Assembly (NCBI RefSeq): GCF_964188315.1
Contig: NC_135656.1
Coordinates: 123,566,001-123,630,000 of the forward strand
DNA from: Podarcis muralis
Taxonomy: Eukaryota
Length of the DNA: 64,000 nt
Direction of reading: 5' to 3'
The translations under genes were made by a program, and so were the position numbers. This document shows positions 2,904 to 53,553 of this stretch, in pieces. The notes under the pieces were generated by a model. The model was not told the origin of the DNA. It saw only the letters and a list, made by a program, of their open reading frames with translations, and searched no databases. Every line of letters starts with the position of its first letter. Position 1 is the stretch's first letter.

Positions 2904-5900
2904 TTATTATTTGTACCCCGCCCATCTGGGCGGCTTCCACAGAGACCAAAAATACACTAAAATGTCACACATTAAAAACTTCCCTGAACAGGGCTGCCTT
3001 AAGATGTCTTCTGAATGTCAGGTAGTTGTTTATCGCTTTGGCATCTGATGGCAGGGCATTTCATAGGGCAGGCGCCACTACCGAGAAGGCCCTCTGCCTG
3101 GTTGCCTGTGGCTTTGCTTCTCGCAGGGAGGGAACCGCCAGAAGGCCCTTGGTGCTGGACCTCAGCGTCCGCGCAGAACGATGGGGGTGGAGACGCTCCT
3201 TCAGGTATACAGGACCGAGGCCTTTTAAGGCTTTCAAGGTCAACACCAACACTTTGAATTGTGCTTGGAAACGTACTGGGAGCCAATGTAGGTCTTTCAA
3301 GACCGGTGTTATATAGTCTCGGCGGCCGCCCCCAGTCACCAGTCTAGCTGCCGCATTCTGGATTAGTTGTAGTTTCCAGGTCACCTTCAAAGGTATCCCC
3401 ATGTAGAGCGCATTGCAGTAGTACAAGCAGGAGATTACTAGAGCATGCACCACTCTGGAGAGACAGTCCGCGAGCAGGTAGGGTCTCAGCCTGCGTACCA
3501 GGTGGAGATGGTAGACAGCTGCCCTGGATACAGAATTGACCTGCACCTCCATGGACAGCTGTGAGTCCAAAATGACTCCCAGGCTGTGCTCCTGGTCCTT
3601 CAGGGGCACAGTTACCCCATTCAGGACCAGGGAGTCCTCCACACCAGCCCACCCCGTCCCCCCAAAACAGTACTTCTGTCTTGTCAGGATTCAACCTCAA
3701 TCCATTAGCCGCCATCCATCCTCCAACCGCCTCCAGGCACTCACATAGGACCTTCACTGGTTCTGATTTGAAAGAGAGGTAGAGCTGGGTATCATCTGCA
3801 TATTGATGGACACCCAGTCCAAACCCCTTGATGATCTCTCCCAGCAGCTTCATATAGATGTTAAAAAGCATGGGGGAGAGGACGGAACCCTGAGGCACCT
3901 CACAAGTGAGGGCCCAGGGGTCTGAACACTCATTCCCCCCCCCCACCACTTTCTGAACACGGCCCAGGAGGAAGAAGCGGAACCACTGTATGACAGTGCC
4001 CCCAGCTCCCAGCCCCTCTAGACGGTCCAGAAGGATGTTATGGTCGATTGTATCAAAGGCCGCTGAGAGATCCAGCAGAACTAGGAAACAGCTCTCACCT
4101 TTGTCCCTAGCTCGCCGGAGATCATCAACTAGCGCGACCAAGGCAGTTTCAGTCCCATGATGAGGCCTGAATCCTGATTGGAAGGGATCCAAATGGTCCG
4201 CATCCTCCAGGCATGCCTGGAGTTGTTCAGCAACCACTCGCTCAATCACCTTACCCAAGAATGGAAGATTTGAGACTGGGCGATAGTTGGCCATACTGGC
4301 TGGGTCTAAAGATGTTTTTTTTAAGAAGCGGTTTAATGATCGCCTCTTTCAGCGGATCTGGGAACTTTCCCTCACAGAGGGAAGCATTCACCACCCTGCA
4401 AAGCCCATCACCCAGCCCTTCCCGGCTTGCTTTTATTAGCCAGGATGGGCAAGGATCAAGGAGACAGGTGGTTCGTTTCACGCGTCCAAGCAGCCTGTCC
4501 ACATCCTCGAGGGTAACGGATTGAAATTGATTCCATGCAACTTGACCAGACAGGGCTCTAGCACTCTCCCGCCCCAGCCCTGCTCCCACGGTGGTGTCTA
4601 GCTCCTTCCGAATATGAGTGATTTTATCTGCAAAAAAACTTTGCAAAATCGTTGCAGGAGATCTTGGGGTCTTTACAAGGCCCCGGTGGTAAAGGTGGTT
4701 CCGTTAAATTGCGGACCACCTGAGTCTCCTGCTACTATTTTCTGCAGATGTAATAGAGGCGGTGAAGAAAGTCTTCTTCGCCGTCACTATCGCCACTTGG
4801 TAGGCTCGACATTGAGCTCTAACCTGTGTCCAGTCAGATTTGGAATGAGTTTTCTGGCACTGACGCTCTAGCCGTCTCAGCGATTGTTTCATTGCCCTCA
4901 GCGCCGAAGAAAACCACAGGGCTGTCTGGGCTCCATGCAATCGGAGAGGGCGCTTCGGAGCCAGACAGTTGATAGCCGTGGTTAACTCCGCATTCCAGCG
5001 GGCCACCAGGGAATCAGCTGAAAGGCCATCACCATGGGACAAAGCATGCCCTACCACTCTCTGGAAACCATTTGGACCCATTAAGTGGCGGGGACGGACC
5101 ATCCAAATTGGTCCCACCTCCCTGCAGAGGGGAAGGGTCGCAGAGAAGTCCAGTTGCACCAGGAGGTGATCTGACCATGGCACTTCTTTTGTTTCACTTT
5201 TACTTAGTGTCAGATCACCACATCACTAGAGGTGAACACCAGGTCTAAGGCATGTCCATGACTATGAGTTGGGCCAAACTTATTCAGGGACAGCCCCATG
5301 GAGGCCATGCTTTCCACGAAGTCCCGAGCGGCCCCCGGTAAGGGCATGTCGGCATGGTTGTTAAAAATCCCCTAGGACAACCAAACTACTGTAGGTGTCT
5401 CCAGGAGAACATCCGCCACGACCTGAAGCAGCTCGGACAAGGAATCCTTGGTGCAGTGGGGAGGTCGGTACACCAAAAGGAATCCTGTACTGCCTCTATT
5501 GCCCAACTTCCAGAACATGCACTCAGAGAACTGGGTCCTCCTAGTAGGACGCCTGATGCAAGCTAATGACTTCCTAAAAATCACTGCAACCCCCCCTCCC
5601 CACCCACATGACCTGGGTTGCTGTGCATAAGAGAAACCTGGTGGGCAAGCAGCGGCAAGGAGAGGCCCATCTGCTTTATCCAACCAGGTCTTTGTCACAC
5701 GTGCCAGGTCAAATCCTCCATCCACAATCAAGTCGTGGATGGCAGTGCTTTTATTCATCATTGCATTACACAGCAACACCTTCAGGTCATGTGGGTTTCC
5801 CCTGTTGATTCCAGTATCCATCCGGTCAAGGCCAGACCCGGAGGCAGGGATAGTCTTCAAACAACGACTAAACCTGCCTCCTCGGTAATGACATGGTCTG

Positions 5901-10515: not shown

Positions 10516-13500
10516 CTACATACATTTAAAGGGCTTCTCCACTGTGTGAGATCGCTGGTGTCTTCTAAGAGTTCTACTATCACTTAAACCCTTCCCACAA
10601 TCCATACATTTAAATGGCTTCTCTCCTGTATGAGTTCGTTGATGTGTTGCAAGAGCTCCACTCTGACTGAAACCCTTCCCACAAATACATTTAAATGGTT
10701 TACTCCCAGTGTGACTTTGTTGGTGCACAGTGAGTCTTCCACTACAAATGAAGCTCTTTCCACACTCCAAACATTTATATGGTTTCTCCCCTGTATGAGT
10801 TCGTTGATGTAGAGTAAGACTTCCACTGGCACTGAAGCACTTTCCACAAACCGTACATTTGTATGGTTTCTCACCTGTGTGAGTTCGTTGGTGTCTAGTA
10901 AGTGTTCCATTGTGACTGAAACTCTGTCCACACTCTAAACATTTAAAGGGTTTCTCCCCTGTGTGAGTTCGTAGATGTATGGTCAGTTTTGAAGCTTCAC
11001 TGAAGTTCTTTCCACACTCAATACATTTAAATGGTTTCTCCCCTGTATGAGTTCGTTGATGTGTTGCAAGAGCTCCACTATGACTGAAACCCTTCCCACA
11101 CATACATTTAAATGATTTCTCCCCGGTGTGACTTTGTTGGTGTAGAGTGAGTTTGCCACTACGAATGAAGCTCTTTCCACACTCCAAACATTTATATGGT
11201 TTCTCCCCTGTGTGAGTCCGCTGATGATTTCTAAGCCCTCCACTCTCAGTGAAACTCTTTCCACAATCCATACATTTAAAGGGCTTCTCCCCTGTGTGAA
11301 TTCGTTGATGTATAGTAAGTTTTCCACTCTCACTGAAGCTCTTTCCGCACTCCATACATTTAAAAGGTTTCTCCCCTGTGTGAGTTCGTAGATGTATAGT
11401 AAGGTGTGAACATTGTCTGAAGCTCTTTCCACACTCCATACATCTAAATGGTTTGTTCCCTGTGTGAATTTGTTTATGTACAGTAAGGTTTCCATTTTTA
11501 CTGAAGCTCTTTCCGCACTCCATGCATTTAAAGGGTTTCTCTCCTGTGTTAGTTTGTAGATGGATGCTAAGGTGTTCACTCACACTTAAGTACTTTGCAG
11601 ATGGCCCTTCAATATTCTGATTGCCTCCTCCATCACCTGGTTTAAAGTGGGAGATAAGAAAATATTGCTAAGTATTTAAGGAAGAAGATCAAACCTATCC
11701 ATTCTTAAGGAAATCAGCCCTGAGTGCTCACTGGAAGGACAGATCGTGAAGCTGAGGCTCCAATACTTTGGCCACCTCATGAGAAGAGAAGACTCCCTGG
11801 AAAAGACCCTGATGTTGGGAAAGATTGATGGCACAAGGAGAAGGGGACGACAGAGGACGAGATGGTTGGACAGTGTTCTTGAAGCTACAAACATGAGTTT
11901 GACCAAACTGCGGGAGGCAGTGGAAGACAAGTATGCCTCGGACACGACTAAACAACTAAACAACAACAACAATTTAAGGAAATGAACAAGAGAACTTAAC
12001 ACACAGCAAGACCAACCAGCACCTTCTCTTATTTTAACACTTCCAGCATCCCTCCCTCTTCTATGTACTAAAGTTTCAGGAAAGGAAAGGAAATCTGAAA
12101 ATAGCCTGAAGAACCCTTAGTATCCAGTTCTACCTTCAACTCCCATGTAGCACCGAACACCAAGAAAACCCTTCTATATACAGGTGAGGCATCTATGGCC
12201 CATTCTTCATCTCCCCCCCCCCCCCAAGTGAAAATGCTTGTGTCTGTATTGGGTTTTCTCCTTCCTCCCTGATCTGTAATATCTGGCTGATACATTCCAA
12301 CCCACTGTACACATCACCTAAACCTGCACCAGGATTCTGGAAAAGATGGGCCCTTGTTCTGATCCAAAAGGGCTCTTTTTATATTCCTACACACTGAAAG
12401 GAGACATACAAAGGTACAGCCTCACAGCAAAGTGGAAGTATGTACCTCTGAATTGGTCCAGGACAACATTCCTGTATTTTTCTGTTCCAAGCGAGGAAGT
12501 GAGCTCAGACTTGAGTATCAGAGTCTCTGCTATGTGGAATAAGTAAAGCAGAATCGTTGTTTATGTCATATGTGACTGTAAAAGTATCCAAAATAACCAT
12601 CTTTTGAAGCAGAGACAGTAAAGTATCTGGTGGCCCATTAAAAGCTAATAAATGACGTCGACCAAAAAACCTCTTTGTAGATTTTACAGAGGTTTTTGTG
12701 GGGAATTCATACCACAATATCAGCTTATTTAGAGTTTCCTACAGACAAAACTAGGGATGCGGGTGGCGCTGTGGGTTAAGGCCTCAGCGCCTAGGACTTG
12801 CCGATCGAAAGTTCGGCGGTTCGAATCCCCGCGGCGGGGTGCGCTCCCATCGTTCGGTCCCAGCGCCTGCCAACCTAGCAGTTCGAAAGCACCTTCAGGT
12901 GCAAGTAGATAAATAGGGACCGCTTACCAGCGGGAAGGTAAACGGCGTTCCGTGCGCTGCTCTGGTTCGTCAGATGCAGCTTGTCACCCTGGCCACGTGA
13001 CCCGGAAGTGTCTGCGGACAGCGCTGGCTCCCGGCCTATAGAGTGAGATGAGCGCACAACCCTAGAGTCTGGCAAGACTGGCCCGTATGGGCAGGGGTAC
13101 CTTTACCTTTTTACAGACAAAACTACAGTGCTGTCAGGATTTACTATGCTCCTCTCATACCAAGAAGCAGCAAGCTGGCAGGTTTATTACTCTTAGATTT
13201 ATTGAGTATTTACACAGTAGCTTCAGTCCGAGCCCTCCCAGCTCAGTCCCAATGAGACAGTTGGAACCACTGGATGACACTGTTGATGCCAGCAGGATAT
13301 CCTCCACCGGTTGACCCACCTCCTGTTGGGCTGCTGTTGCGCCTCTACTCTACTCTTCCGCCTACTCCGAGGAGACTAGAGGACAGCCTGCCCCTCCTGC
13401 GCCGAATCTAACAGCGGCAGTTCCTCTGAAGCAGGCTCTGTCTGCCCTGTGCTGTCTAGGGAATTTATAGCCTGCATTCCAGGATGGGAGAGACTTCCAT

Positions 13501-31600: not shown

Positions 31601-31985
31601 CCGAGCACAATTCAAAGTGTTGGTGCTGACCTTGAAAGCCCTAAAAGGCCTTGATCCAGTATACCTGAAGGAGCGTCTCCACCTCCATTGTTCTGCCCGG
31701 ACACTGAGGTCCAGCGCTGAGGGCTTTCTGGAATTTCCCTTATTGTGAGAAGTGAGGTTACAGGAAACCAGACAGAGGGCCTTCTTGGTAGTGGCGCCCT
31801 CCCTGTGGAACGCCCTCCCATCAGATGTGAAGGAAATAAGCAGCTATCTTATTTTTAAAAGACACCTGAAGGCAGCCCTGTTTAGGGAAGTTTTTAATAT
31901 TTAATGATGTATTGTTTTTAACACTCGATTGGGAGCCACCCAGAGTGCCTAGGGAAACTCAGCCAGATGGGTGGGGTATAAATAA

Positions 31986-32042
<57 letters not shown>

Positions 32043-33974
32043 TTGTAGCTAGGTAACTCTTGTCTAATCTGCTCGGTGTCTGTGTCTCTCCCTCTTCAGA
32101 GAGGAGCTGAATGAAATGCCCTCTTCAAGGAGGGTTCACCTTTTGCCAGCCTGTAATGGTCAGGGGTCCCTTTACCTTTTTAATGTCCCCACAGCACCAG
32201 GAAACTTAATATGCCCATCTGCTGAGACTTGTAGAATTTTTCAGGATTTAATTATGGTAGCTCCTCTACAGAATTTTGTCTTATGGTTTCGACTTCTACT
32301 ACATCACCTGTACAGTTTTACTGATGGATAGGTGGAACGTCTTCCAAATCTATCCATTAATAAAAAGCAACTCATAAGAAAAATCGAGGATATAAGAAAG
32401 GCCTTGTTGCATAGAAAGAACAGCCCTTCCACCCCCACGTGATCTCCAGCAACTAGTATTCAAAGGAAGTCAAAGGTCACTTCCAATGTTGCTGGGAGTA
32501 CATGTCAGGTAATCTTCTCCTGGGGAATATCTTGATGAGTGAGAGGAATGTCGGCAAGAGAGCCAAGGTGTATTGGGTTCACCAAACCTGTCACTTCCGG
32601 AGGGTTGTTGTTCTGCCATGGAGTCAGTAAGCACTAGGGCCAGAGAGACCACCTGACAATTTCTGAGAGATCTCCAGCAGTTCAGGAATGGAGGCAGTGC
32701 CGTACAATGATACTCCTCCGAGTTCCTTGGAGGAATCATAGAATTTTAATGCAATACGTGATTTTACAAATTATTATTCTAGCTTCGATATATTATAAAG
32801 TTGGGGCTTAACACATCTGCTTCTCAATATTCAAACATGACAAGAAGCTGCCTTGATACTGAGTCAGCCTATTGCTCCATTTAACCCACAGTTGTCTAAT
32901 CGAGGAGTCCATAATTATTTCTGGCCTTGGCACTAGATATTAATTTTTCGAGGTGAATAATAGGAAAAATGGGTGCTGCTGCCAAAATGTCTATCACCAA
33001 ATGCAATAGTGATGTCAGCAAATTTCAGGTGTGCAACTGAAATTAGGATACTGAACTGTGTTTTCCTCTATGCAGATGCTGATGAATGCACCAAATGTCC
33101 GGAAGATCAGCATCCAAATGAGGATAGACAACAATGTGTCCCCAAATTATTGACCTTCCTGACCTATGAAGAATGTTTGGGGATCCTCCTGGCTTCCCTT
33201 GCCCTCCTCTTATCCTTAACCACAGGCTTTGTCTTAGGAATCTTCCTTAAATACAAAGAAACTCCAATAGTCAAAGCCAACAACAGGGACCTCTCCTACA
33301 TCCTCCTCATCTCTCTACTGCTCTCCTTTTTGTCCTCCTTCCTCTTTATCGGGAATCCAAGGAAAGTGACCTGCCTTCTCCGTCAAACAGCCTTCTGCAT
33401 CATCTTCTCAGTTGCTGTCTCTTCCGTCTTGGCAAAAACCATCACTGTAGTTCTGGCCTTCCTGGCCACTAAGCCAGGGAACAAGGTGAGGAAATGGCTG
33501 GGGAAGAGTTTGGCCCACTCCATTGTCATTTCCTGCTCCAGTGTCCAAGTTCTCATCTGCACCATCTGGCTGGGGATCTCTCCTCCATTCCCAGACTTTG
33601 ACCTCAGCTCCCAGCTTGGAGAGATCATTGTCCAATGCAATGAAGGCTCTGTTGCCATGCTTTACAGTTCCCTTGGCTACATGGGCTTCCTGGCTGCCAT
33701 CTGCTTCGTGGTGGCTTTCCTAGCCAGGAAGCTGCCTGGGGCCTTCAACGAAGCCAAGCTGATCACCTTCAGCATGCTGGTCTTCTGCAGTGTTTGGGTG
33801 TCCTTTGTGCCCACCTACCTGAGCACCAAGGGGAAATTCATGGTAGCTGTGCAGATCTTCTCTATCTTGGTCTCCAGTGCTGGGCTCCTGGGCTGCATCT
33901 TCATTCCCAAATGCTACATTATTATATTGAGGCCTGATTTGAATACAAAGGAGCACCTGACAAGAAAAAACTAA
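23121..33974 (+). CDS. Vomeronasal type-2 receptor (V2R) copy 1, 848 aa. Exons 23121-23329, 23853-24144, 24861-25649, 29466-29696, 30483-30609, 33076-33974
   Basis: Six exons (209/292/789/231/127/899 nt) with canonical GT-AG and compatible phases sum to 2547 nt. Signal peptide; [14 protein letters not shown] and RWTWVGL Venus-flytrap motifs; Cys-rich CCYDC domain; 7TM with [26 protein letters not shown] and [12 protein letters not shown]. Confidence 0.93.
26648..27464. mobile_element. Non-autonomous hAT (Tip100-like) element
   Basis: TIR TA(T/A)GGTTACCAGAT, perfect 8-bp TSD atctaata; empty site in the local duplicate at ~26100. Confidence 0.85.
27850..28700 (+). mobile_element. RTE-X-like LINE 3' remnant with (TAA)n tail
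   Basis: [22 protein letters not shown] and [17 protein letters not shown]-type C-terminus. Confidence 0.6.
28295..28432. mobile_element. hAT-Charlie MITE
   Basis: Palindromic actacaactccca core, TIRs, perfect TSD ctctagaa (NTCTAGAN consensus). Confidence 0.9.
28700..29100 (-). mobile_element. L2 3' remnant (second subfamily)
   Basis: [16 protein letters not shown]...[16 protein letters not shown]; the same tail occurs at 52641-52877. Confidence 0.8.
30848..31300. mobile_element. Tc1/mariner MITE with an internal GCTAAGCC/CAGCTGATCC minisatellite
   Basis: TIRs plus TA TSD; tandem ~24-nt units at ~31010-31220. Confidence 0.88.
31565..32042 (+). mobile_element. L2 3' remnant with (ATT)n tail
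   Basis: [25 protein letters not shown] motif. Confidence 0.85.
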
Positions 33975-39951: not shown

Positions 39952-42900
39952 TTATTATTTATACCCCGCCCATCTGGCTGGGCCTCCCCAGCCACTCTGG
40001 GCGGCTTCCATAAAAACCACAACCACAAAAACCATGTTGTTCTGCGTCCTACCTGCTCTCCATTTCCCGTGCTACACTTGTTTTCTGATAAACTTGAAAA
40101 TGTTCATTTCATTTCATTAATTTAAAGCTATGTTTCAAAGCTTTTCATAATGAATTTTAAATAATTAGTAGTAGTTTTGACATGTATTGCTCTCCAAAGC
40201 ATGACTTGTTTTCTAAAGGGTAGGAAATGTTGTGGGATGTGTTTGAGTTGCAAGTTATTTGTAATAAATAAAATGTGAACACAATTCTTTTCCCCATGCA
40301 CAACATATTCTATGCAACTTCAAATTTTAAATGTTGACTTTGCTTCCCTCCACCCTCCTCCCTTGCAAAACTTCTGCAGACACACGTACAGGTAGACCTC
40401 TGTCTCACTTTGTTCTACCTCCTGGCCCCTTTTCCAAGTCACTTTGATTAATACAAAAAAGAATGTGAGGATGACTGTGTGACACACTTTTTTTTGCAGC
40501 TGGGTGGATAAGAAGAACTCACACGTTATTTCCTTCTCCCTTGCTGTTCGGGATATTAATCATAACCCCAGCATCTTACCCAACATTACACTGGGCTACA
40601 GCATCTATGATACCTGTTCTGAGGGACGACTGACTTCTGACTCCATGACAGACCTGCTTGCTGGTGGGAAAATCAATATTCCAAACTACAGCTGTGGGAA
40701 GCAGAAAAGGCTGCTAGCTGTTCTTGAAAAGAGTAGATTTGATGTCTCCACACACATTGCAAGCATATTGGGCATCTACAAGATCCCACAGGTAATCAAT
40801 GGGTCCAAGTGAAACACACCTGGCAATATTAGCCACCTGGTTGTTGTTGTTGGCATCTGTCTGTCTTGAAAGACGATGGCGTGAGCCTCTGGGACGAAGT
40901 CAAACCACTGTGTTAGCACTATCAAAGTGATGTCCACAGTGCACAAGCCTAGGCAGTCGGTACGGAGGTCCAGGGCTGCCCAGATGACAAGACCTCCCTC
41001 TCAGGCTCACTGCTGTGGTCCAAAGGAAAGCAGAGCAATGCATTTGGCACAAGCTTGGCTGCAGGAGTTGCTGGAAGGAGGCAAACAAAGCACCACTCAG
41101 CTGACTTAGGATTTGTGCAGGGTTTACTCCTTAGCCTTTTATTCTCCCAGATGTTGGAGGGTATCCAGGGTTATGGAACTCCCTTGCAGTTGAGGACAGA
41201 CAGGCCCCTTTCCTACTGTCTTTCTAGGGTCTATGCAAACTTTACCTTTTTTCTTTTCTTTCCCCCCTTCCCTTCCCTTCCCTTTCTTTACAACAGGCAT
41301 TTTAATTGAAGTTTTATTATACAGTTTTACCATCTTGATTTTTTTACTGAATCTTTTTTAAGTGCATAGAGAATTTTGCCATTACTCAGTATAATAATTG
41401 CTTGTTATACTCACAAAACGGTGAGGTTTGCATTAAATCTGTCAGCATATTTCATATAGAAGTATCCCACCTTAATCCTTAAGCTATCAATCTCTTTCCC
41501 TTTCTTCACCAGCTCAGTTATGGCTTTGCTCTTTCTGATAAATTCCAGTCCCCCTTTGTCTACCGGATGGTCCCAAACCAAGAAACGCAGTACCAAGGGA
41601 TGGTCCAACTCCTCCTGCATTTCAGGTGGACATGGGTCGGCCTCTTTGCTCCAGACAATGACAGTGGAGAAAGGTTCCTGAGTACCTTGACACCTCTAAT
41701 GAACAAAAGGGAAATTTGTGTTGCCTTCACACAAAGAGTACTACGAGAAACATGGCTATGGATACCCCAAGAACCACCTGCCCTGTGGAGACAAGTCAAT
41801 GTATTTGTTTACTTTGCAGACTCTCAAAGTGGACTTTACATAATCATAGAGGTACAGTCCTTACTGGAAAGGATACAAACTGGGGGGAAAGTCTGGATAA
41901 CCACAGTTCCTTCAAACAAAATGTTGTTATGTGATATTGACTGCTTCCAGTATGCTCATGGCTCTTTGTCTTTTGTAATGAAGACCAAAAAAAGGATGAA
42001 GAAGGACTACTATGGGCCAATGTCCTTGGCTAGTCAACAGTATTCAGAAGAAGCATTTCATTGTTCATATTCCAAGCATGCCTTGTCTGTGAGGGGTATG
42101 ATCAAATGCAGAGAGAAGGATAATGTGAAGATGCTCCCCCAGGAAGAGATTGAAAGAATCCAGTCCCAAGACAGCTATGTGAACTACTTGAGTATCCAAG
42201 CTGTGGCTCAGGCCTTAAATGCTGCATATTCATCCTGGTCAAAGAGGATGTTGATTGTGGGTGGAGGCAGTTTGGATCTTCAAAAGCTACAGCCATGGCA
42301 GGTAAGTCCTTTTCCTTTTACAAACTAGAATTCATTGTCCCTGCTCCGGAATCACCATGATAGGATCATCTGAATCTGTCTTGCACTGTGTCAGAACACT
42401 GGTTAGTACTGTCTACATTGACTGACTGGCCGTTGACATTGTTTTCACCTGCTGGCAGAAGTCCATCAGAGTTTGTCCCATCCAGGTTCCCAGTTGAAAG
42501 GAATTCTACACTAGTTACAGGTGGAGCACAACAGAAACGACCCATTGGTGTATGGGAAGTCAAGATCACAGATACAGTGCTATATTCCTGCTGACAGAAG
42601 TATCATCCAATAATTTGCAGGCAGAGACGGCAAAACATAGAAAGAGATGTGGAACTCATTGGACCAATGCGCTGATTCAACTTAGCAGCCTCTAACATGA
42701 ATACAGTGGTACCTCGGGTTAAGTACTTTATTCGTTCCGGAGGTCCTTTCTTAACCTGAAGCGGTTCTTAACCTGAAGCACCACTTTAGCTAATGGGGCC
42801 TCCCGCTGCTGCTGCACCGCCGAAGCATGATTTCTGTTCTCATCCTGAAGCAAGGTTCTTAACCCGAGGTACTATTTCTGGGTTAGCGGAGTCTGTAACC

Positions 42901-45900: not shown

Positions 45901-48900
45901 GCTAATTCTGAGGTTTAGATGTGTCCCAGAAACACAAGGTGAGGACATCATGAATAAATTGACAAAGGAAATAGCGAAATGGCTTCGAGTGAGAGAAGAA
46001 GACCTGATATTGGATACTGACAAAATTTTCAGGATGAAACCAGATGCTAAAAGACCATTTAAGGGGCCAGGGGATTGCCTAGTTTTCCTCAATTTGAGGT
46101 TGCTGAAAGATAAGATCTTACAAAAAAGAATGACAATAGATGGACATAATATATTAATATACAAAGAAATTCCTAAATGAATTCTTAAAAAATGAAATAA
46201 TTACAAGATATTGACAGATGTGCTGAAATCTAAAGGAATTATGTTCAATTGACTTCAATCTTGTTGGTGCTTCTCTGGAGCTAGGTCCATTGAGTTCAAT
46301 GAAACCTGCTCTTGAGTAAACATGTATAAAATTTCAAAGTAAATAGGAAACATTCCAAACACATTTCCCCAACTTGGTGCCCTCCAAATATTGTGCACTA
46401 CAACACCCATGCACCCCAACTAGCATTGTGGAAAGATATCTGAGGGGCACCAGGTTGGGTATAGCTGGAGTATAGTAAGGTATTCCACATCTGTTTGGGC
46501 ATAGAGACATGCCACACAAGCAAACTGGGCATCAAATTCTGCACTAGGTGCAGACTTTGAAAGCAACACCAATGTTTCCATTGGCAGATGTCATGGCAAC
46601 AAATGGAGGACTTGTTTTATTGCTGATGTTCATATGATGGTTTATGCCATGCTCCTGTTTCTTGTTAACTGTTATCTGCAATACAGCAATACTATTGTAG
46701 CATAGAAATGTGAGATGAGCAGAAACACACACACACACACGCACCCAAATTATCTTCCATGCAACTCTGCAAAAAATAAAGAGAAACGTAACTGTCCCAA
46801 AATAGGGCCTGGTATCAACTTCGGTCTTTATCCAAAGGCACAAATTCACCTATCACTTTCTCCTTAGTGCTCAGTTTTCTGTTCATGCCTAGATGGTGCC
46901 TCGTTCAAGATGCACAGAAAGTTGTCTCCCTGGATATTCCAGAAAAGTTCAGGAAGGGAAGCCACCCTGCTGCTATGATTGCGCTCCCTGCTCAGAAGGA
47001 ACCATCTCCACTCAGGAAGGTAGGAGAGGATCTCAGGGGAAATGGCCTTTGATGGGAGGATGGGGCAAATATTTGAGCCAGTCCAAATAAAATGTTAATA
47101 ACCATAATTAACAAGCAGTTTATATTTTATAGTCTCTCTGCATTCTTTGTTCTCTAATATGGACAGACCTCCTAGTTTGTGGCGAGAGAGGGTGCCCCCC
47201 CACTCTCTTATGACGTCCTTGCTGGCTATTCCCTCCCTTCTGTTTCTCTTTCCATTATCTCGTAGCTAGGTAACTCTTGTGTAATCTGATCAGTGTCTGT
47301 GTCTCTCCCACTTCAGAGAGGAGCTGATCTGCCTGAGAATGCATTCCCCAATCCTCTGATTCAGACCATTCCCTGACAGGCACCTCTTTTTCTAGAAAAT
47401 AGAACCGGAAATGTCACCCCATGAATGAAATGTGCTCTTCAGGAGGGTCACCTATTGCCAGCCAGTAATGTCCCCACAGCACCAGGGATTTTTTCGGTCC
47501 ATGTAAAATTTAATTTGCCCATCTTCAGAGACGTGTAGAATTTTTCAGGATTTAATTATGGCAGTTCCCCTATGGAATTTTATGTTATGGTTTTTATAAT
47601 GTTGTTTTCCCATGCATCATATTGGTTTCCAGTACATCACCCATTTAGTTTTACTGATGGATAGGTGGAACATCTTCAAAATTTATCCATTAATAAAAAG
47701 TAACTCATAAGAAAAATCGAGGATATAAGAAAAGTATTGCTGCATAGAAAGAACAGCCCTCCCACCCCATGTGATCTCCAGCAACTAGTATTCAAAGGCA
47801 TTCAAAGGTCACTTTCAATGTTGTAGGGAGTATATGGCAGTGAATCTGGTCCTCGGGAATATCTTGATGAGGGGAAAGTGGGCAGGATAAATAGGATGTA
47901 ATGGTTACAGATAGGTAGCCGTGTTGGTCTGCCATAGTCAAAACAAAAAAAATTCCTTCCAGTAGCACCTTAAAGACCAACTAAGTTAGTTCTTGGTATG
48001 AGCTTTCGTGTGCATGCACACTTGAAGAAGCGTATCTGAAGAAGTGTGCATGCACACGAAAGCTCATACCAAGAACTAACTTAGTTGGTCTTTAAGGTGC
48101 TACTGGAAGGAATTTTTTTTGTTTTGAGGATGTAATGGGTTCACCAAACCTGTGGCCTCAGGACGGTTGTTGTCCTGCCATGGAGTCAGTCGGCACTAGG
48201 GCCAGAGAGACCAGCTGACAATTTCTGAGAGGTCCCCAGAAGTTCAGGAATGGAGGCAGTGCCGCACAATTATACTCCTCTGAGTTCCTTGGAGGAATAA
48301 AGCAATATGTGATTTAGAAACAACAGCAACAACATGATTTATTATTTCTACCCCGCCCATCTGGCTGGGCCTCCCCAGCCACTCTGGGCGGCTTCCAAGA
48401 GAAGGTTAAATATACATTAAAACATCTGTTATTAAAAACTTCCCTAAACAGAGAATAATTGTAGCTTCAATATATTCTAAAATAAGTTGAGTCTTAACCC
48501 ATATGCTTCACAATAATCAAACATCACAAGAAACTGCCATTATACTGAGTCAACCTATTGATTCATTTAACCCAAGGTTGCATAATCCAGCGGTCCAGAA
48601 TTTTTTCTGGCCTTTGCACTAGATTTCCCAGGTGAAAAATAGCAGCTGGGTGCTGCCGCCAACCTGTCACTCACCAAATGCAATAGTGATGCCAGCTTTA
48701 AAGCCTTGATTGCCAGCACTTCAAAGTACAGTGTGGGCCTTTTTGAAAATCCTGTGCAAGCAGCTCGACAGCATGCAGACTACTGTAGGTTTGTGACGGA
48801 TGTTAGGATACTGAACTGTGTTTTCCTCTCTGCAGATGCAGATAAATGCACCAAATGTCCAGAAGATCAGCATCCAAATGAGGATAGACATCAATGTGTC

Positions 48901-49734
48901 CCCAAAATATTTACCTTCCTGTCCTATGAAGAATGTTTGGGGAGCCTCCTGGCTTCCCTTGCCCTCCTCTTATCCTTAACCACAGGTTTTGTGTTAGGAA
49001 TCTTCACTAAATATAAAGAAACTCCCATAGTCAAAGCCAACAACAGGGACCTCTCCTACATCCTCCTCATGTCTCTACTGCTCTCCTTTTTGTCCTCCTT
49101 CCTCTTCATTGGAAAGCCAAGGAACGTGACCTGCCTTCTCAGACAAACAGCCTTCTGCATCATCTTCTCAGTTGCTGTCTCTTCTGTCTTGGCAAAAACC
49201 ATCACTGTAGTGCTGGCCTTCCTGGCCACTAAGCCAGGGAACAAGGTGAGGAAATGGCTGGGGAAGAGTTTGGCCCACTCCATTGTCATTTCCTGCTCCA
49301 GTGTCCAACTTGTCATCTGCACCATCTGGCTGGGGATCTCTCCTCCATTCCCAGACTTTGACCTGAGCTCTCAACTTGGAGAGATCATTGTCCAATGCAA
49401 TGAAGGCTCTGTTGCCATGTTTTATGGTTCTCTTGGCTACATGGGCTTCCTGGCTGCCATCTGCTTCACAGTGGCTTTCTTAGCAAGGAATCTGCCTGGG
49501 GCATTCAATGAGGCCAAGCTGATCACCTTCAGCATGCTGGTCTTCTGCAGTGTTTGGGTGTCCTTTGTGCCCACCTACCTGAGCACAAAGGGAAAATTCA
49601 TGGTAGCCGTTCAGATCTTCTCCATTTTGGCCTCCACTGCTGGGCTCCTGGGTTGCATCTTCATTCCCAAATGCTACATTATTATATTGAGGCCTGATCT
49701 GAACACAAAGGAGCACCTGACAACAAAAAACTAA
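39668..49734 (+). CDS. V2R copy 2, 848 aa. Exons 39668-39876, 40500-40791, 41513-42301, 44806-45036, 46893-47019, 48836-49734
   Basis: Exon lengths and phases identical to copy 1. All exons open, with the same class C GPCR motifs. Confidence 0.93.
42704..42945. mobile_element. Tigger-like MITE
   Basis: TIRs plus TA TSD. Confidence 0.88.
43579..44101 (+). mobile_element. 5'-truncated RTE-X-like LINE
   Basis: 12-bp TSD gttgtgaaccac; CPNW...[18 protein letters not shown]-terminus; terminal AATAAA. Confidence 0.6.
45141..46248. mobile_element. L1 insertion with an inverted 5' segment (ORF2 end on minus, ORF1 piece on plus)
   Basis: ORF 45484..45744 (-) L1 ORF2 C-terminus; ORF 45818..46180 (+) L1 ORF1-like; 13-bp TSD ttgact(g/t)caatct; empty site in V2R-1 at ~29780. 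Confidence 0.75.
47905..48126. mobile_element. Penelope-like element inverted terminal-repeat remnant
   Basis: Perfect 85-bp inverted repeat (47939-48023 / 48042-48126), 12-bp TSD aggatgtaatgg; absent in the V2R-1 intron. Confidence 0.75.
48032..48069 (+). ncRNA. Minimal type-I hammerhead ribozyme motif
   Basis: GUAU-CUGAAGA-A-GUGUG(CAUG)CACAC-GAAA-GCUC/AUAC: conserved core, stem I, stem II, palindromic AGCU helix III. Confidence 0.7.
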
Positions 49735-49946: not shown

Positions 49947-52900
49947 TGTTGTTGTTTAGTCGTTTAGTCGTGTCCGACTCTTCGTGACCCCATGGACCAG
50001 AGCACGCCAGGCACCTCTGTCCTCCACTACCTCCCGCAGTTTGGTCAAACTCATGCTGGTAACCTCGAAAACACTATCCAACCATCTCGTCCTCTGTTGC
50101 CCCCTTCTCCTTGTGCCCTCCATCTTTCCCAGCATCAGTGTCTTCTCCAGGGAGTCTTCTCTTCTCATGAGGTGGCCAAAGTACTGGAGCCTCAGCTTCA
50201 CGATCTGTCCTTCCAGTGAGCACTCAGGGCTGATTTCCTTAAGAATGGATGCGTTTGATCTTCTTGCAGTCCATGGGACTCTCAAGAGTCTTCTCCAGCA
50301 CCATAATTCAAAAGCATCAATTCTTCGGCGATCAGCCTTCTTTATGGTCCAGCTCTCACTTCCATACATCACTACTGGGAAAACCATGGCTTTAACTATA
50401 CGGACCTTTGTTGGCAAGGTGACGTCTCTACTTCTCAAGATGCTGTCTAGGCCTGTCATTGCCCTTCTCCCAAGAAGCAGGTGTCTTTTAATTTCGTGGC
50501 TGCTGTCACCATCTGCAGTGATCATGGAGCCCAAGAAAGTAAAATCTCTCACTGCCTCCATTTCTTCCCCTTCTATTTGCCAGGAGGTGATGGGACCAGT
50601 GGCCATGATCTTCATTTTTTTGATGTTGAGCTTCAGACCATATTTTGCGCTCTCCTCTTTCACCCTCATTAAAAGGTTCTTCCTCCTCACTTTCTGCCAT
50701 CAAGGTTGTGTCATCTGCATAACTGAGGTTGTTGATATTTCTTCCGGCAATCTTAATTCCAGTTTGGGATTCATCCAGCCCAGCCCTTCGCATGATGTAT
50801 TCTGCATATAAGTTAAATAGGCAGGGAGACAATATACAGCCTTGTCGTACTCCTTTCCCAATTTTGAACCAATCAGTTGTTCCATATCCAGTTCTAACTG
50901 TAGCTTCTTGTCCCACATAGAGATTTCTCAGGAGACAGATGAGGTGATCAGGCACTCCCATTTCTTTAAGAACTTGCCATAGTTTGCTGTGGTCGACACA
51001 CTCAAAGGCTTTTGCATAGTCAATGAAGCAGAAGTAGATGTCTTTCTGGAACTCTCTAGCTTTCTCCATAATCCAGCGCATGTTTGCAATTTGGTCTCTG
51101 GTTCCTCTGCCTCTTCTAAATCCAGCTTGCACTTCTGGGAGTTCTCGATCCGCATACTGCTTGAGCCTTCCTTGTAGAATTTTAAGCATAACCTTGCTAG
51201 CGTGTGAAATGAGTCCAATTGTGTGGTAGTTGGAGCATTCTTTGGCACTGCCCTTCTTTGGGATTGGGATGTAGACTGATCTTCTCCAATCCTCTGGCCA
51301 CTGCTGAGTTTTCCAAATTTGCTGGCATATTGAGTGTAGCACCTTAACAGCATCATCTTTTAAAATTTTAAATAGTTCAGCTGGAATACCATCACTTCCA
51401 CTGGCCTTGTTATTTGCAGTGCTTTCTAAGGCCCATTTGACTTCACTTTCCAGGATGTCTGGCTCAAGGTCAGCAACCACACTACCTGGGGTGTATGAGA
51501 CATCCATATCTTTCTGGTATAATTCCTCTGTGTATTCTTGCCACCTCTTCTTGATGTCTTCTGCTTCTGTTAGGTCCTTACCACTTTTGTCCTTTATTAT
51601 GGTAATCTTTGTACGAAATGTTCCTTTCATATCGCCAATTTTCTTGAACAGATCTCTGGTTCTTCCCATTCTGTTGTTTTCCTCTATTTGTTTGCATTGC
51701 TCGTTTAAGAAGGCCTTCTTGTCTCTCGTTGCTATTCTTTGGAAATCTGCATTCAATTTCCTGTATCTTTCACTATCTCCCTTGCATTTTGCTTGCCTTC
51801 TCTCCCCCGCTATTTGTAAGGCCTCATTGGACAGCCACTTTGCTTTCTTGCATTTCCTTTTCATTGGGATGGTTTTCGTTGCTGCCTCCTGTACAATGTT
51901 ACGAGCCTCCATCCATAGTTCTTCAGGCACTCTGACCACCAAATCTAAATCCTTAAACCTGTTCCTCACTTCCACTGTGTATTCATAAGGGATTTGACTT
52001 AGATTGTATCTTACCGGCCCAGTGGTTTTTCCTACTTTCTTCAGTTTAAGCTTGAATTTTGCTATAAGAAGCTGATGATCTGAGCCACAGTCAGCTCCAG
52101 GTCTTGTTTTTGCTGACTTGTATAGAGCGTCTCCATCTTTGGCTGCAGAGAATATAATCAATCTGATTTTGATGCTGCTCATCTGGTGATGTTGATGTGT
52201 AGAGTCGTCTCTTGTGTTGTTGGAAAAGCGTGTTTGTGATGACCAGCTTGTTCTCTTGACAGAACTCTATTAGCCTTTGCCCTGCTTCGTTTTGAACTCC
52301 AAGGCCAAACTTGCCAGTTGTTCCTTTTATCTCTTGATTCCCTACTTTAGCATTCCAATCCCCTATAATGAGAAGAACACCCTTCTTTGGTGTCATTTCT
52401 ATAAGGTGTTGTAAGTCTTCATAGAATTGGTCAATTTCAGTTTCTTCAGCACCAGTGGTTGGTGCATAAACTTGGATTACTGTGATGTTAAAAGGTCTGC
52501 CTTGGATTCGTATCGAGATCATTCTATCATTTTTCAGATTGCATCCCAGTATAGCTTTCGCCACTCTTTTGTTGACTATGAGGGCCACTCCCATTTCTTT
52601 TACGGGTCAGCACCAGTAGTTGGTGCATAAACTTGGATTACAGAGCTGTTCCACCAGGCCTTTGGTCAGGGCACAGCCTGACCCCCTCCTCTGGCAATCG
52701 GCAATCTGCACAGAATTTTGCTTGATGGTTGCCATTAATTTGATTTTAATTTGATTTAATTAATTTTATAATGAATGTTTTTAGAATGTCGGACTATTTT
52801 GATTGTTGTTAGCCGCCCTGAGCCCAGCTTCGGCTGGGGAGGGCAGGATATAAATAAAATTTATTATTTATTATTATGTTAAAAGGTCTGCCTTGGATTC

Positions 52901-53553
52901 GTATCGAGATCATTCTATCATTTTTGAGATTGCATCCTAGTACAGCTTTCGCCACTCTTTTGTTGACTATGAGGGCCACTCCATTTCTTTTACGGGTTTC
53001 TTGCCCACAGTAGTAGATGTGATGGTCATCCAAACTGAATTTGCCCATTCCCCTCCATTTTAGTTCACTGATGCCCAGGATGTCAATATTTATTCTTGCC
53101 ATCTCATTTTTGACCACCTCCAACTTACCCAGGTTCATGGTTCTTACATTCCAGGTTCCTATGCAATATTTTTCTTTACAGCATTGGACTTTCCTTTCGC
53201 TTCCAGGCATATCCGCAACTGAGCGTCCTTTCGGCTTTGGCCCAGCCGCTTCATCAGCTCTGGATCAAATTGTACTTGCCCTCCGCTCTTCCCCAGTAGC
53301 ATGTTGGACGCCTTCCGACCTGAGGGGCTCATCTTCCAGCGTCATAACTTTTATATGCCTGTTGTCTTTGTCCATGCAGTTTTCTTGGCAGGGATACTGG
53401 AGTGGCTTGCCGGTTCCTCCTCCAGGTGGATCACGTTTGGTCAAAACTCTCCACTATGACCTGTTCATCTTGTGTGCCCTGCTCGGCGTAGTTCATAGCT
53501 TCTCTGAGTTCTTCAAGCCCCTTCGCCACGGCAAGGCAGTGATCCATGAAGGG
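49947..53553 (-). mobile_element. Full-length Bov-B LINE (frameshifted)
   Basis: 5' UTR, EN (IGTWNVRT, GDWNAKVG), RT (FIDYAKAF, VRQGCILSP, YADD) and (CAA)n tail; 13-bp TSD ggtaaaaggtctt; empty site at ~34770. Confidence 0.95.
52641..52877 (+). mobile_element. L2 3' tail nested in Bov-B
   Basis: Matches the 28700-28920 L2 tail. Confidence 0.82.

What the first reader, a model, noticed from the sequence alone, without database searches (positions are those of the whole stretch)
47905..48126. Hammerhead ribozyme in a Penelope-like inverted repeat, sense to the V2R-2 pre-mRNA (intron 5)
Seen: CUGAAGA and GAAA cores, stem II GUGUG/CACAC, 4-bp stem I GUAU/AUAC, palindromic AGCU helix III, and predicted cleavage after C48065. 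It lies inside a perfect 85-bp inverted repeat with a 12-bp TSD, and the insertion is absent from V2R-1. Established: Penelope-like element terminal repeats carry minimal hammerheads that need dimerisation. Inference: in the V2R pre-mRNA the antisense arm would lock the ribozyme in a long dsRNA hairpin (a possible ADAR substrate), so this is a paralog-specific RNA structure that could affect splicing or stability.
Basis: partly seen in the sequence, partly recalled or inferred. Interest (0 to 1): 0.7.

Follow-up and report, generated by a model that had tools for sequence, protein, structure and literature searches.

The report
Penelope-type hairpin insert with buried hammerhead
A young 222-base retroelement fragment that landed head-to-head in the last intron of a vomeronasal receptor gene carries a genuine minimal hammerhead ribozyme motif, but the motif is locked inside a perfect hairpin and the insert is one ordinary copy of a very abundant, already described kind of element.

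Summary
Window 47905-48126 is a 222-bp insertion with a perfect 12-bp target-site duplication. It consists of two inverted partial copies of one element, identical at 85 of 85 bases. The paralogous V2R-1 intron has the unoccupied site. It lies in intron 5 of V2R-2, and its plus arm is sense to the gene.

The plus arm carries every feature published for minimal hammerheads of Penelope-like elements (PLEs), with a predicted cut after C48065. A descriptor of those features hits once in the window and never in 200 shuffles. Rfam hammerhead models give no match, even at E up to 10.

One arm is 34 nt longer than the other. This matches the optional PLE "tail", and PLE protein is known to prime on both target strands.

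Forcing the ribozyme helices costs about 45 kcal/mol against the -162 kcal/mol hairpin, so the ribozyme is almost certainly inert here. Two RNA runs show no V2R-2 reads. Transcripts of the family show no ends at the cut site. They do show an A-to-G pattern that fits the published hyper-editing of lizard Penelope elements.

The scan has noted this element family many times on other DNA of this genome. Verdict: ordinary, low interest.

The parts
47893..47904 (.). Left copy of the 12-bp target-site duplication AGGATGTAATGG
   Evidence: the single homologous copy in V2R-1 is at 32565-32576
47905..47938 (-). 34-nt 'tail': an extra 3'-terminal stretch present only on the minus-strand arm. It contains an AC-rich stem-loop (sense ...GGCAGACCAACACGGCUACC...)
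   Evidence: alignment of the two arms; fold; matches the optional 30-40 bp PLE tail between two RT start sites (PMC11167929); family copies end here (table 7, loose ends before 47904)
47939..48023 (-). Minus-strand arm: element copy truncated at its 5' end inside the hammerhead. It keeps stem II, GAAA and the cut site but lacks CUGAAGA
   Evidence: 85/85 identical to the plus arm
48024..48031 (.). 8-nt junction filler GAAGAAGC between the arms; with T48023 it repeats TGAAGAAG of 48037-48044
   Evidence: (D3); microhomology or template switching is inferred, not shown
48032..48126 (+). Plus-strand arm: element copy from the family's usual 5' boundary (G48032) to the tail-less 3' end
   Evidence: recurrent boundary at 48032; family ends at 48125/6
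48032..48069 (+). Minimal type-I hammerhead motif: helix I 48032-35/48066-69, core CUGAAGA 48036-42, unpaired A48043, helix II 48044-48/48053-57 with loop CAUG, GAAA 48058-61, palindromic GC 48062-63, U16.1 C17 48064-65. Predicted cut between 48065 and 48066
   Evidence: features as listed in PMC4209133; no Rfam match
48127..48138 (.). Right copy of the target-site duplication
47020..48835 (+). Intron 5 of V2R-2, the host of the insert (context)
32565..32576 (+). Unoccupied homologous site in intron 5 of the paralog V2R-1

Best explanation
This is a single, recent, dead-on-arrival insertion of a short non-coding fragment of a Penelope-like retroelement (PLE). The PLE protein cut both strands of the target 12 bp apart, which gives the target-site duplication. 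Reverse transcription then started on both DNA ends from the same RNA region, once at the outer start site (arm with the 34-nt tail) and once at the inner start site (arm without it). The two cDNAs ran toward the hammerhead and were joined head to head through an 8-nt filler. The plus arm kept the whole minimal hammerhead; the other arm lost the CUGA box. In V2R-2 pre-mRNA the insert would fold into a perfect duplex of 85 bp or more, which sequesters the ribozyme. The motif has no helix III of its own and no second hammerhead in cis. No self-cleavage is therefore expected, and the only likely RNA-level consequence is promiscuous A-to-I editing of the intronic hairpin. Shown: the anatomy, the empty site, the thermodynamics, the family abundance and the family termini. 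Inferred: the two-ended priming mechanism, the inertness of the ribozyme, and editing at this locus.
For: TSD, arms and empty site. [quoted passage not shown] The Anolis Poseidon_Ac hammerhead has the same layout with a different sequence. The 34-nt difference between arms equals the PLE 'tail' between two RT initiation sites; PAc protein cleaves and extends both strands, and RT starts about 85-92 nt downstream of the cut site, against 61 and 95 nt here (PMC11167929). Family-level termini lie at 47905, 48125/6 and 48032, junction points in other inverted copies vary, and word depth is about 10^4-10^5 times that of the flanks. Hairpin -162.3 kcal/mol (z -24); hammerhead alone -7.9 (z -0.46); enforcing it costs 44.8 kcal/mol. 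Only one hammerhead motif is in the 64-kb window. No pile-up of read ends at 48065/66 (table 6), as also reported for Anolis PAc. Arms 85/85 and TSD 12/12 identical, against 80-92% identity of the paralogous introns, so the insertion is much younger than the gene duplication.
Against: No PLE ORF (GIY-YIG plus RT) is in the window; the RT ORFs present belong to APE-type LINEs. The PLE link therefore rests on motif type, tail signature and literature, not on an adjacent autonomous element. Rfam hammerhead models do not match. No other copies could be fetched, so covariation in helix II was not tested. The target is not AT-rich (51% A+T), unlike the preference reported for PAc. Identity of the arms could partly reflect gene conversion within the palindrome.
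Confidence: 0.85

Rival explanations
1. The hammerhead is active in the V2R-2 pre-mRNA, either through trans-dimerisation with other family transcripts or assisted by PLE protein, and cuts intron 5, lowering V2R-2 output relative to V2R-1.
For: The core is intact. Family transcripts of both strands are present in cells. The Anolis PAc hammerhead cleaves only with protein help.
Against: There is a 45 kcal/mol penalty against the hairpin. The left arm is transcribed first, so the duplex can form as the ribozyme emerges. Min-HHRs have low activity even as dimers. No read ends at the cut site appear in family transcripts or in Anolis. Cleavage within an intron need not reduce mRNA.
Confidence: 0.03
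2. The intronic hairpin acts as a dsRNA signal (ADAR hyper-editing, or Dicer processing into small RNAs) that measurably alters V2R-2 splicing, nuclear retention or expression.
For: There is a perfect duplex of 85 bp or more. Lizard Penelope elements are massively hyper-edited (PMC5625713). A strand-specific, RNA-only A>G pattern is seen at 47970, 47971, 47982, 48004 and 48005, none of them with a 5' G neighbour. Rfam microRNA models score the hairpin, though below their thresholds.
Against: Editing of an intronic hairpin far from the splice sites (885 and 709 nt) usually has no effect on the mRNA. The A>G reads come from other copies, and this locus has no reads on its unique flanks. Some of the variant letters exist in a few genomic copies (table 3). 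The microRNA hits are generic matches to any long hairpin, 35-50 bits below the gathering scores.
Confidence: 0.07
3. It is a MITE or foldback DNA transposon with terminal inverted repeats, and the hammerhead-like string is incidental.
For: Long perfect inverted repeat with a target-site duplication.
Against: The termini are asymmetric: 34 extra bases on one side only. A 12-bp TSD is atypical for DNA transposons (general knowledge). Other copies of the family occur as single arms, with variable inner junctions and fixed outer ends, as expected from 5' truncation of cDNA (tables 5 and 7). The descriptor hit is not expected by chance (0 in 200 shuffles), and all four non-descriptor features of PLE min-HHRs are present.
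Confidence: 0.03

Closest known systems
Minimal hammerhead ribozymes (min-HHR) of metazoan Penelope-like elements (Cervera & De la Pena 2014, PMC4209133)
   Same: CUGANGA, GAAA and UH boxes; one unpaired nucleotide between A9 and 10.1; G10.1-C11.1; palindromic 15.2/16.2 (AGCU) and no helix III loop; short 4-bp helix I with no loop 1. They occur mostly as dispersed single motifs or as pairs on opposite strands 100-700 bp apart.
   Different: Helix II is 5 bp with a 4-nt loop, against the 6-8 bp emphasised in the paper. The two arms here are only 18 nt apart, and one of them has lost the catalytic box.
Poseidon_Ac (PAc) of Anolis carolinensis (PMC11167929)
   Same: The hammerhead has the same layout (extra nucleotide after A9, palindromic dinucleotide, C17). 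RT initiation sites lie some 60-95 nt downstream of the cut site. There is an optional 30-40 bp tail, and both target strands are cut and extended.
   Different: No recognisable sequence identity to the PAc consensus in the hammerhead or downstream of it, judged by eye. In PAc the ORF starts in stem II and continues downstream; here all three frames close within 60 nt, so this unit is non-coding.
Non-LTR retrozymes (tandem hammerhead repeats giving circular RNAs; PMC7229834 and bioRxiv 10.64898/2026.07.22.740005)
   Same: Short non-autonomous hammerhead-bearing derivatives of PLE terminal regions, found in reptiles.
   Different: Retrozymes are direct tandem repeats with a hammerhead in every unit. 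This is an inverted pair with a single complete hammerhead, so no unit-length RNA can be excised or circularised.
Inverted Alu/SINE pairs as ADAR substrates; hyper-edited Penelope elements in lizard (Porath et al. 2017, PMC5625713)
   Same: An intronic inverted repeat forming long dsRNA. Penelope is the most heavily edited repeat class reported in the lizard.
   Different: Here both arms come from one insertion event and form a perfect hairpin. Editing of this copy was not observed because the gene is silent in the runs available.

Membership tests
Hammerhead ribozyme (Rfam covariance models) | Match to a hammerhead covariance model | tested here: not met
   No hammerhead family is listed at E up to 10, either in 47000-49000 or in the isolated 48024-48080 segment. 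These models include a helix III that this motif lacks.
Hammerhead ribozyme (general) | Conserved core C3 U4 G5 A6 N7 G8 A9, G12 A13 A14, A15.1/U16.1, H17 | tested here: met
   48036-42 CUGAAGA, 48058-61 GAAA, U48064, C48065
Hammerhead ribozyme (general) | Three helices around the core within one molecule | tested here: not met
   Helix III would be A-U and G-C with no loop, which cannot form in cis. It can form only as AGCU:AGCU between two molecules.
Hammerhead ribozyme (general) | Self-cleavage after H17 | not testable with these tools
   Indirect only: no pile-up of RNA read ends at 48065/66 among family reads (table 6).
PLE minimal hammerhead (PMC4209133) | [quoted passage not shown] | tested here: met
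   A48043 (descriptor hit with bulge = 1)
PLE minimal hammerhead (PMC4209133) | G10.1-C11.1 pair closing helix II | tested here: met
   G48044-C48057
PLE minimal hammerhead (PMC4209133) | Palindromic 15.2-16.2 with no or tiny loop 3 | tested here: met
   G48062 C48063 within AGCU
PLE minimal hammerhead (PMC4209133) | Family-wide covariation in helices I and II | not testable with these tools
   Only one copy is in the window. Scans of the metagenome and viral collections gave chance matches only.
Penelope-like element insertion | Optional 30-40 bp 3' tail from two RT start sites | tested here: met
   A 34-nt difference between the arms; family ends at both sites (table 7); definition
Penelope-like element insertion | RT plus GIY-YIG endonuclease ORF | tested here: not met
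   None in this copy or in the window. The RT ORFs present carry Exo_endo_phos, so they are LINEs. The copy is a non-autonomous fragment.
Penelope-like element insertion | AT-rich target / ATT cleavage motif | tested here: inconclusive
   The target is 51% A+T. An ATT is present on the bottom strand inside the TSD (CCATTAC), but that is weak evidence.
Non-LTR retrozyme | Direct tandem repeats, each with a hammerhead | tested here: not met
   The arms are inverted and there is one complete hammerhead.
microRNA precursor (mir-559, MIR1222 and others) | Score at or above the Rfam gathering threshold | tested here: not met
   Best hit 60.6 bits against a threshold of 95; both strands hit equally, as for any perfect hairpin.

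The most novel reading that the evidence does not exclude
The perfect hairpin in V2R-2 intron 5, once transcribed in vomeronasal neurons, is hyper-edited or diced, and this changes V2R-2 output relative to its insert-free paralog V2R-1. That would make a young Penelope fragment a cis-modifier of receptor expression.
Probability: 0.04. Interest if true: 0.4.

Novelty: new member of a known kind. Interest (0 to 1): 0.15.

Why it matters
It matters little on its own. It is one more copy of an abundant PLE-derived unit whose hammerhead type, tail signature, inverted arrangement and editing have all been published. Its use is as a clean worked example. The paralog supplies the empty site, and the two arms record both RT start sites in a single event. 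The copy also shows how head-to-head integration silences the ribozyme it carries. Similar hits elsewhere in this genome can be triaged the same way.

Tried and rejected
1. Rfam scans at a permissive E-value, on 2 kb and on the isolated 57-nt motif, gave no hammerhead and only sub-threshold microRNA hairpin hits, which I rejected as generic.
2. Pattern scans of metagenome contigs and viral contigs for relatives gave 32 loci. All are chance matches, with no helix II and no downstream similarity, so no covariation test or covariance model was possible.
4. RNAcofold of two motif copies gave a minimum-energy dimer (-32.8 kcal/mol) that pairs the 14-nt palindromic stem II between molecules. The classical double hammerhead scores only -13.3. 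Nearest-neighbour energies do not model the core, so this counts only as a caution, not as evidence.
5. I looked for a PLE ORF in the window and found none; the RT ORFs belong to APE-type LINEs.
6. On polymorphism, DNA contigs of runs X1 and X2 run from the unique left flank 24-26 nt into the insert, at the same depth as the flank (table 8). That is short of the tool's 31-letter rule, so presence in both samples is likely but not proven. No empty-allele joint was among the rows shown.
7. MITE reading: rejected because of the asymmetric termini.

Full report
**Observation**

The stretch 47905-48126 is a 222-bp insertion bracketed by a perfect 12-bp direct repeat, AGGATGTAATGG, at 47893-47904 and 48127-48138. 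Inside it, 47939-48023 and 48042-48126 are complementary at 85 of 85 positions.

The paralogous intron of the upstream V2R gene aligns on both sides of the insert at 88-90% identity. It holds one copy of the target, AAGGTGTATTGG at 32565-32576, and nothing in between. This is a classical empty site.

**Gene context**

Two tandem V2R genes lie on the plus strand. V2R-2 has these parts:
- an ANF_receptor exon at 41567-42328;
- an NCD3G exon at 46893-47019, followed by a GT donor;
- a 7tm_3 exon from 48836, after a CTGCAG acceptor, to the stop at 49734.

The insert is therefore in intron 5. It lies 885 nt from the donor and 709 nt from the acceptor, and its plus arm is sense to the gene.

**The ribozyme motif**

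On the plus strand the sequence reads GUAU-CUGAAGA-A-GUGUG(CAUG)CACAC-GAAA-GC-UC|AUAC (48032-48069). This is the full hammerhead core, with the cut predicted after C48065.

Cervera and De la Pena list four features that recur in PLE minimal hammerheads and were not part of their search descriptor. All four are present:
- a nucleotide between A9 and 10.1 (A48043);
- a G10.1-C11.1 pair;
- a palindromic 15.2/16.2 dinucleotide (AGCU), with no helix III loop;
- a short helix I.

My own descriptor of these features finds this one site in 64 kb on both strands, and none in 200 dinucleotide shuffles.

Rfam's hammerhead models do not match at E up to 10, either in a 2-kb scan or on the isolated motif. 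Those models include a helix III, which this class lacks by design. The negative result therefore lowers the claim 'member of an Rfam hammerhead family' but not the claim 'PLE minimal hammerhead'.

The minus-strand arm has UUCUUCA where CUGAAGA should be, so there is only one ribozyme motif.

**What the insert is**

The two arms are copies of one template and differ at both ends.
- The minus arm runs 34 nt further at its outer (3') end (47905-47938).
- The plus arm runs 10 nt further at its inner (5') end.
- An 8-nt filler (48024-48031) joins them.

Work on the Anolis element Poseidon_Ac showed three relevant things. The PLE protein cleaves and extends both target strands. Reverse transcription starts internally at two adjacent sites downstream of the hammerhead. 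The 30-40 bp between those sites is the optional 'tail' of genomic copies.

The present insert fits that scheme as one event in which each target strand primed a cDNA, one from each start site, 61 and 95 nt downstream of the cut site.

The Poseidon_Ac consensus has a hammerhead of the same layout but a different sequence, and its ORF continues downstream. Here all frames close within 60 nt, so this unit is non-coding.

No PLE ORF is in the window. The RT ORFs present carry an APE endonuclease, so they belong to LINEs.

**Family-level evidence from reads**

In two DNA runs, the summed word depth over the insert is about 10^4 to 10^5 times that of the unique flanks. This is a rough guide and not a copy number.

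Loose ends with unrelated flanks pile up at three places: 47904/5 (tail end), 48125/6 (tail-less end), and just before 48032. Many other inverted copies join variable left-arm positions to 48032.

Fixed outer ends with variable inner junctions are what 5'-truncated cDNA produces, not cut-and-paste transposition. I therefore reject the MITE reading.

The sharp 5' boundary at G48032, four bases before the CUGA box, is unexplained.

**How it behaves as RNA**

- The insert folds into a near-perfect hairpin of -162.3 kcal/mol (z = -24).
- The hammerhead segment alone folds at -7.9 kcal/mol, no better than shuffles.
- Enforcing helices I and II within the insert costs 44.8 kcal/mol.

The complementary arm is transcribed first. 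The motif needs a partner for helix III, and no second hammerhead exists in the window.

Published min-HHRs cleave poorly even as dimers, and the Anolis one cleaves only with protein help. I conclude that the ribozyme is inert in this context. This is an inference.

**Expression**

Two bulk RNA runs of the same species gave no reads on the unique parts of intron 5 or on exons 5 and 6. V2R-2 is silent in those samples, whose tissue is not known to me, and nothing can be said about this locus.

Reads from other copies cover the insert on both strands. No position shows an excess of read ends, including 48065/66 (table 6). This agrees with the Anolis report that no reads begin or end at the cut site.

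Five T>C differences (47970, 47971, 47982, 48004, 48005) occur in 2-46% of reads whose first mate lies on the plus strand. They do not occur on the other strand, and are nearly or wholly absent from the DNA contigs. The first three sites reach 8-46%; 48004 and 48005 reach 2% in X23 and 23% in X24.

In a reverse-stranded library these are A>G changes on element-sense RNA. None of the five sites has a 5' G neighbour. This is what ADAR editing looks like.

Porath et al. reported Penelope as the massively hyper-edited repeat of the lizard, with over 40,000 sites. Expressed variant copies cannot be excluded as the source of the differences.

**Age**

The arms are 85/85 identical and the target-site duplication 12/12, against 80-92% identity between the paralogous introns. 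The insertion is therefore much younger than the gene duplication, unless the palindrome homogenises itself.

Contigs of both DNA runs run from the left flank 24-26 nt into the insert at flank-like depth (table 8). This suggests, but does not prove, that both samples carry the insert.

**Comparison and verdict**

The element works like, and by every feature I could test is, a minimal hammerhead on a PLE-derived fragment.
- It is not a retrozyme: there are no tandem units.
- It is not a microRNA precursor: scores are far below threshold.
- It is not a foldback DNA transposon.

Earlier notes of this scan describe the same kind of head-to-head Penelope fragments at many other places in this genome, including another V2R intron. 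I reached the same reading independently from the anatomy, the folds, the reads and the papers.

Nothing points to an effect on V2R-2. The finding is real but ordinary.

Noticed in passing
window 48032 (family-wide): About 98% of the family's genomic word depth stops exactly at G48032, four bases upstream of the CUGA box. The abundant unit therefore begins with the intact hammerhead rather than at its cut site. RNA reads that run past this point share one upstream consensus. What sets this boundary is unexplained.
   Followed up: partly
window 47970, 47971, 47982, 48004, 48005: RNA-only, strand-specific T>C differences (A>G on element-sense RNA) in family reads of runs X23 and X24. They fit the published hyper-editing of lizard Penelope elements but cannot be tied to this locus.
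   Followed up: partly
window 48338-48469: A second very-high-copy repeat in the same intron, with core ACCCCGCCCATCTGGCTGGG...CCCCAGCCACTCTGGGCGGCTTCC. An 80% identical copy lies inverted in the V2R-1 intron at 31878-31985. It is not a tRNA gene.
   Followed up: no
window 50506-53210 (-) and 3344-4294 (-): LINE remnants. A 558-aa RVT_1 ORF, with Exo_endo_phos ORFs upstream of it, lies directly after the V2R-2 stop codon. A second RVT_1 ORF lies near the window start.
   Followed up: partly
window 10516-11583 (-): An open 355-aa C2H2 zinc-finger ORF with about 12 fingers, upstream of the V2R pair.
   Followed up: no
window 48146-48307: The DNA contigs of run X1 leave a hole on the unique right flank of the insert (depth 0-2.5, against about 14 elsewhere). 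The tool warns that a filter removes some records, so I drew no conclusion.
   Followed up: no
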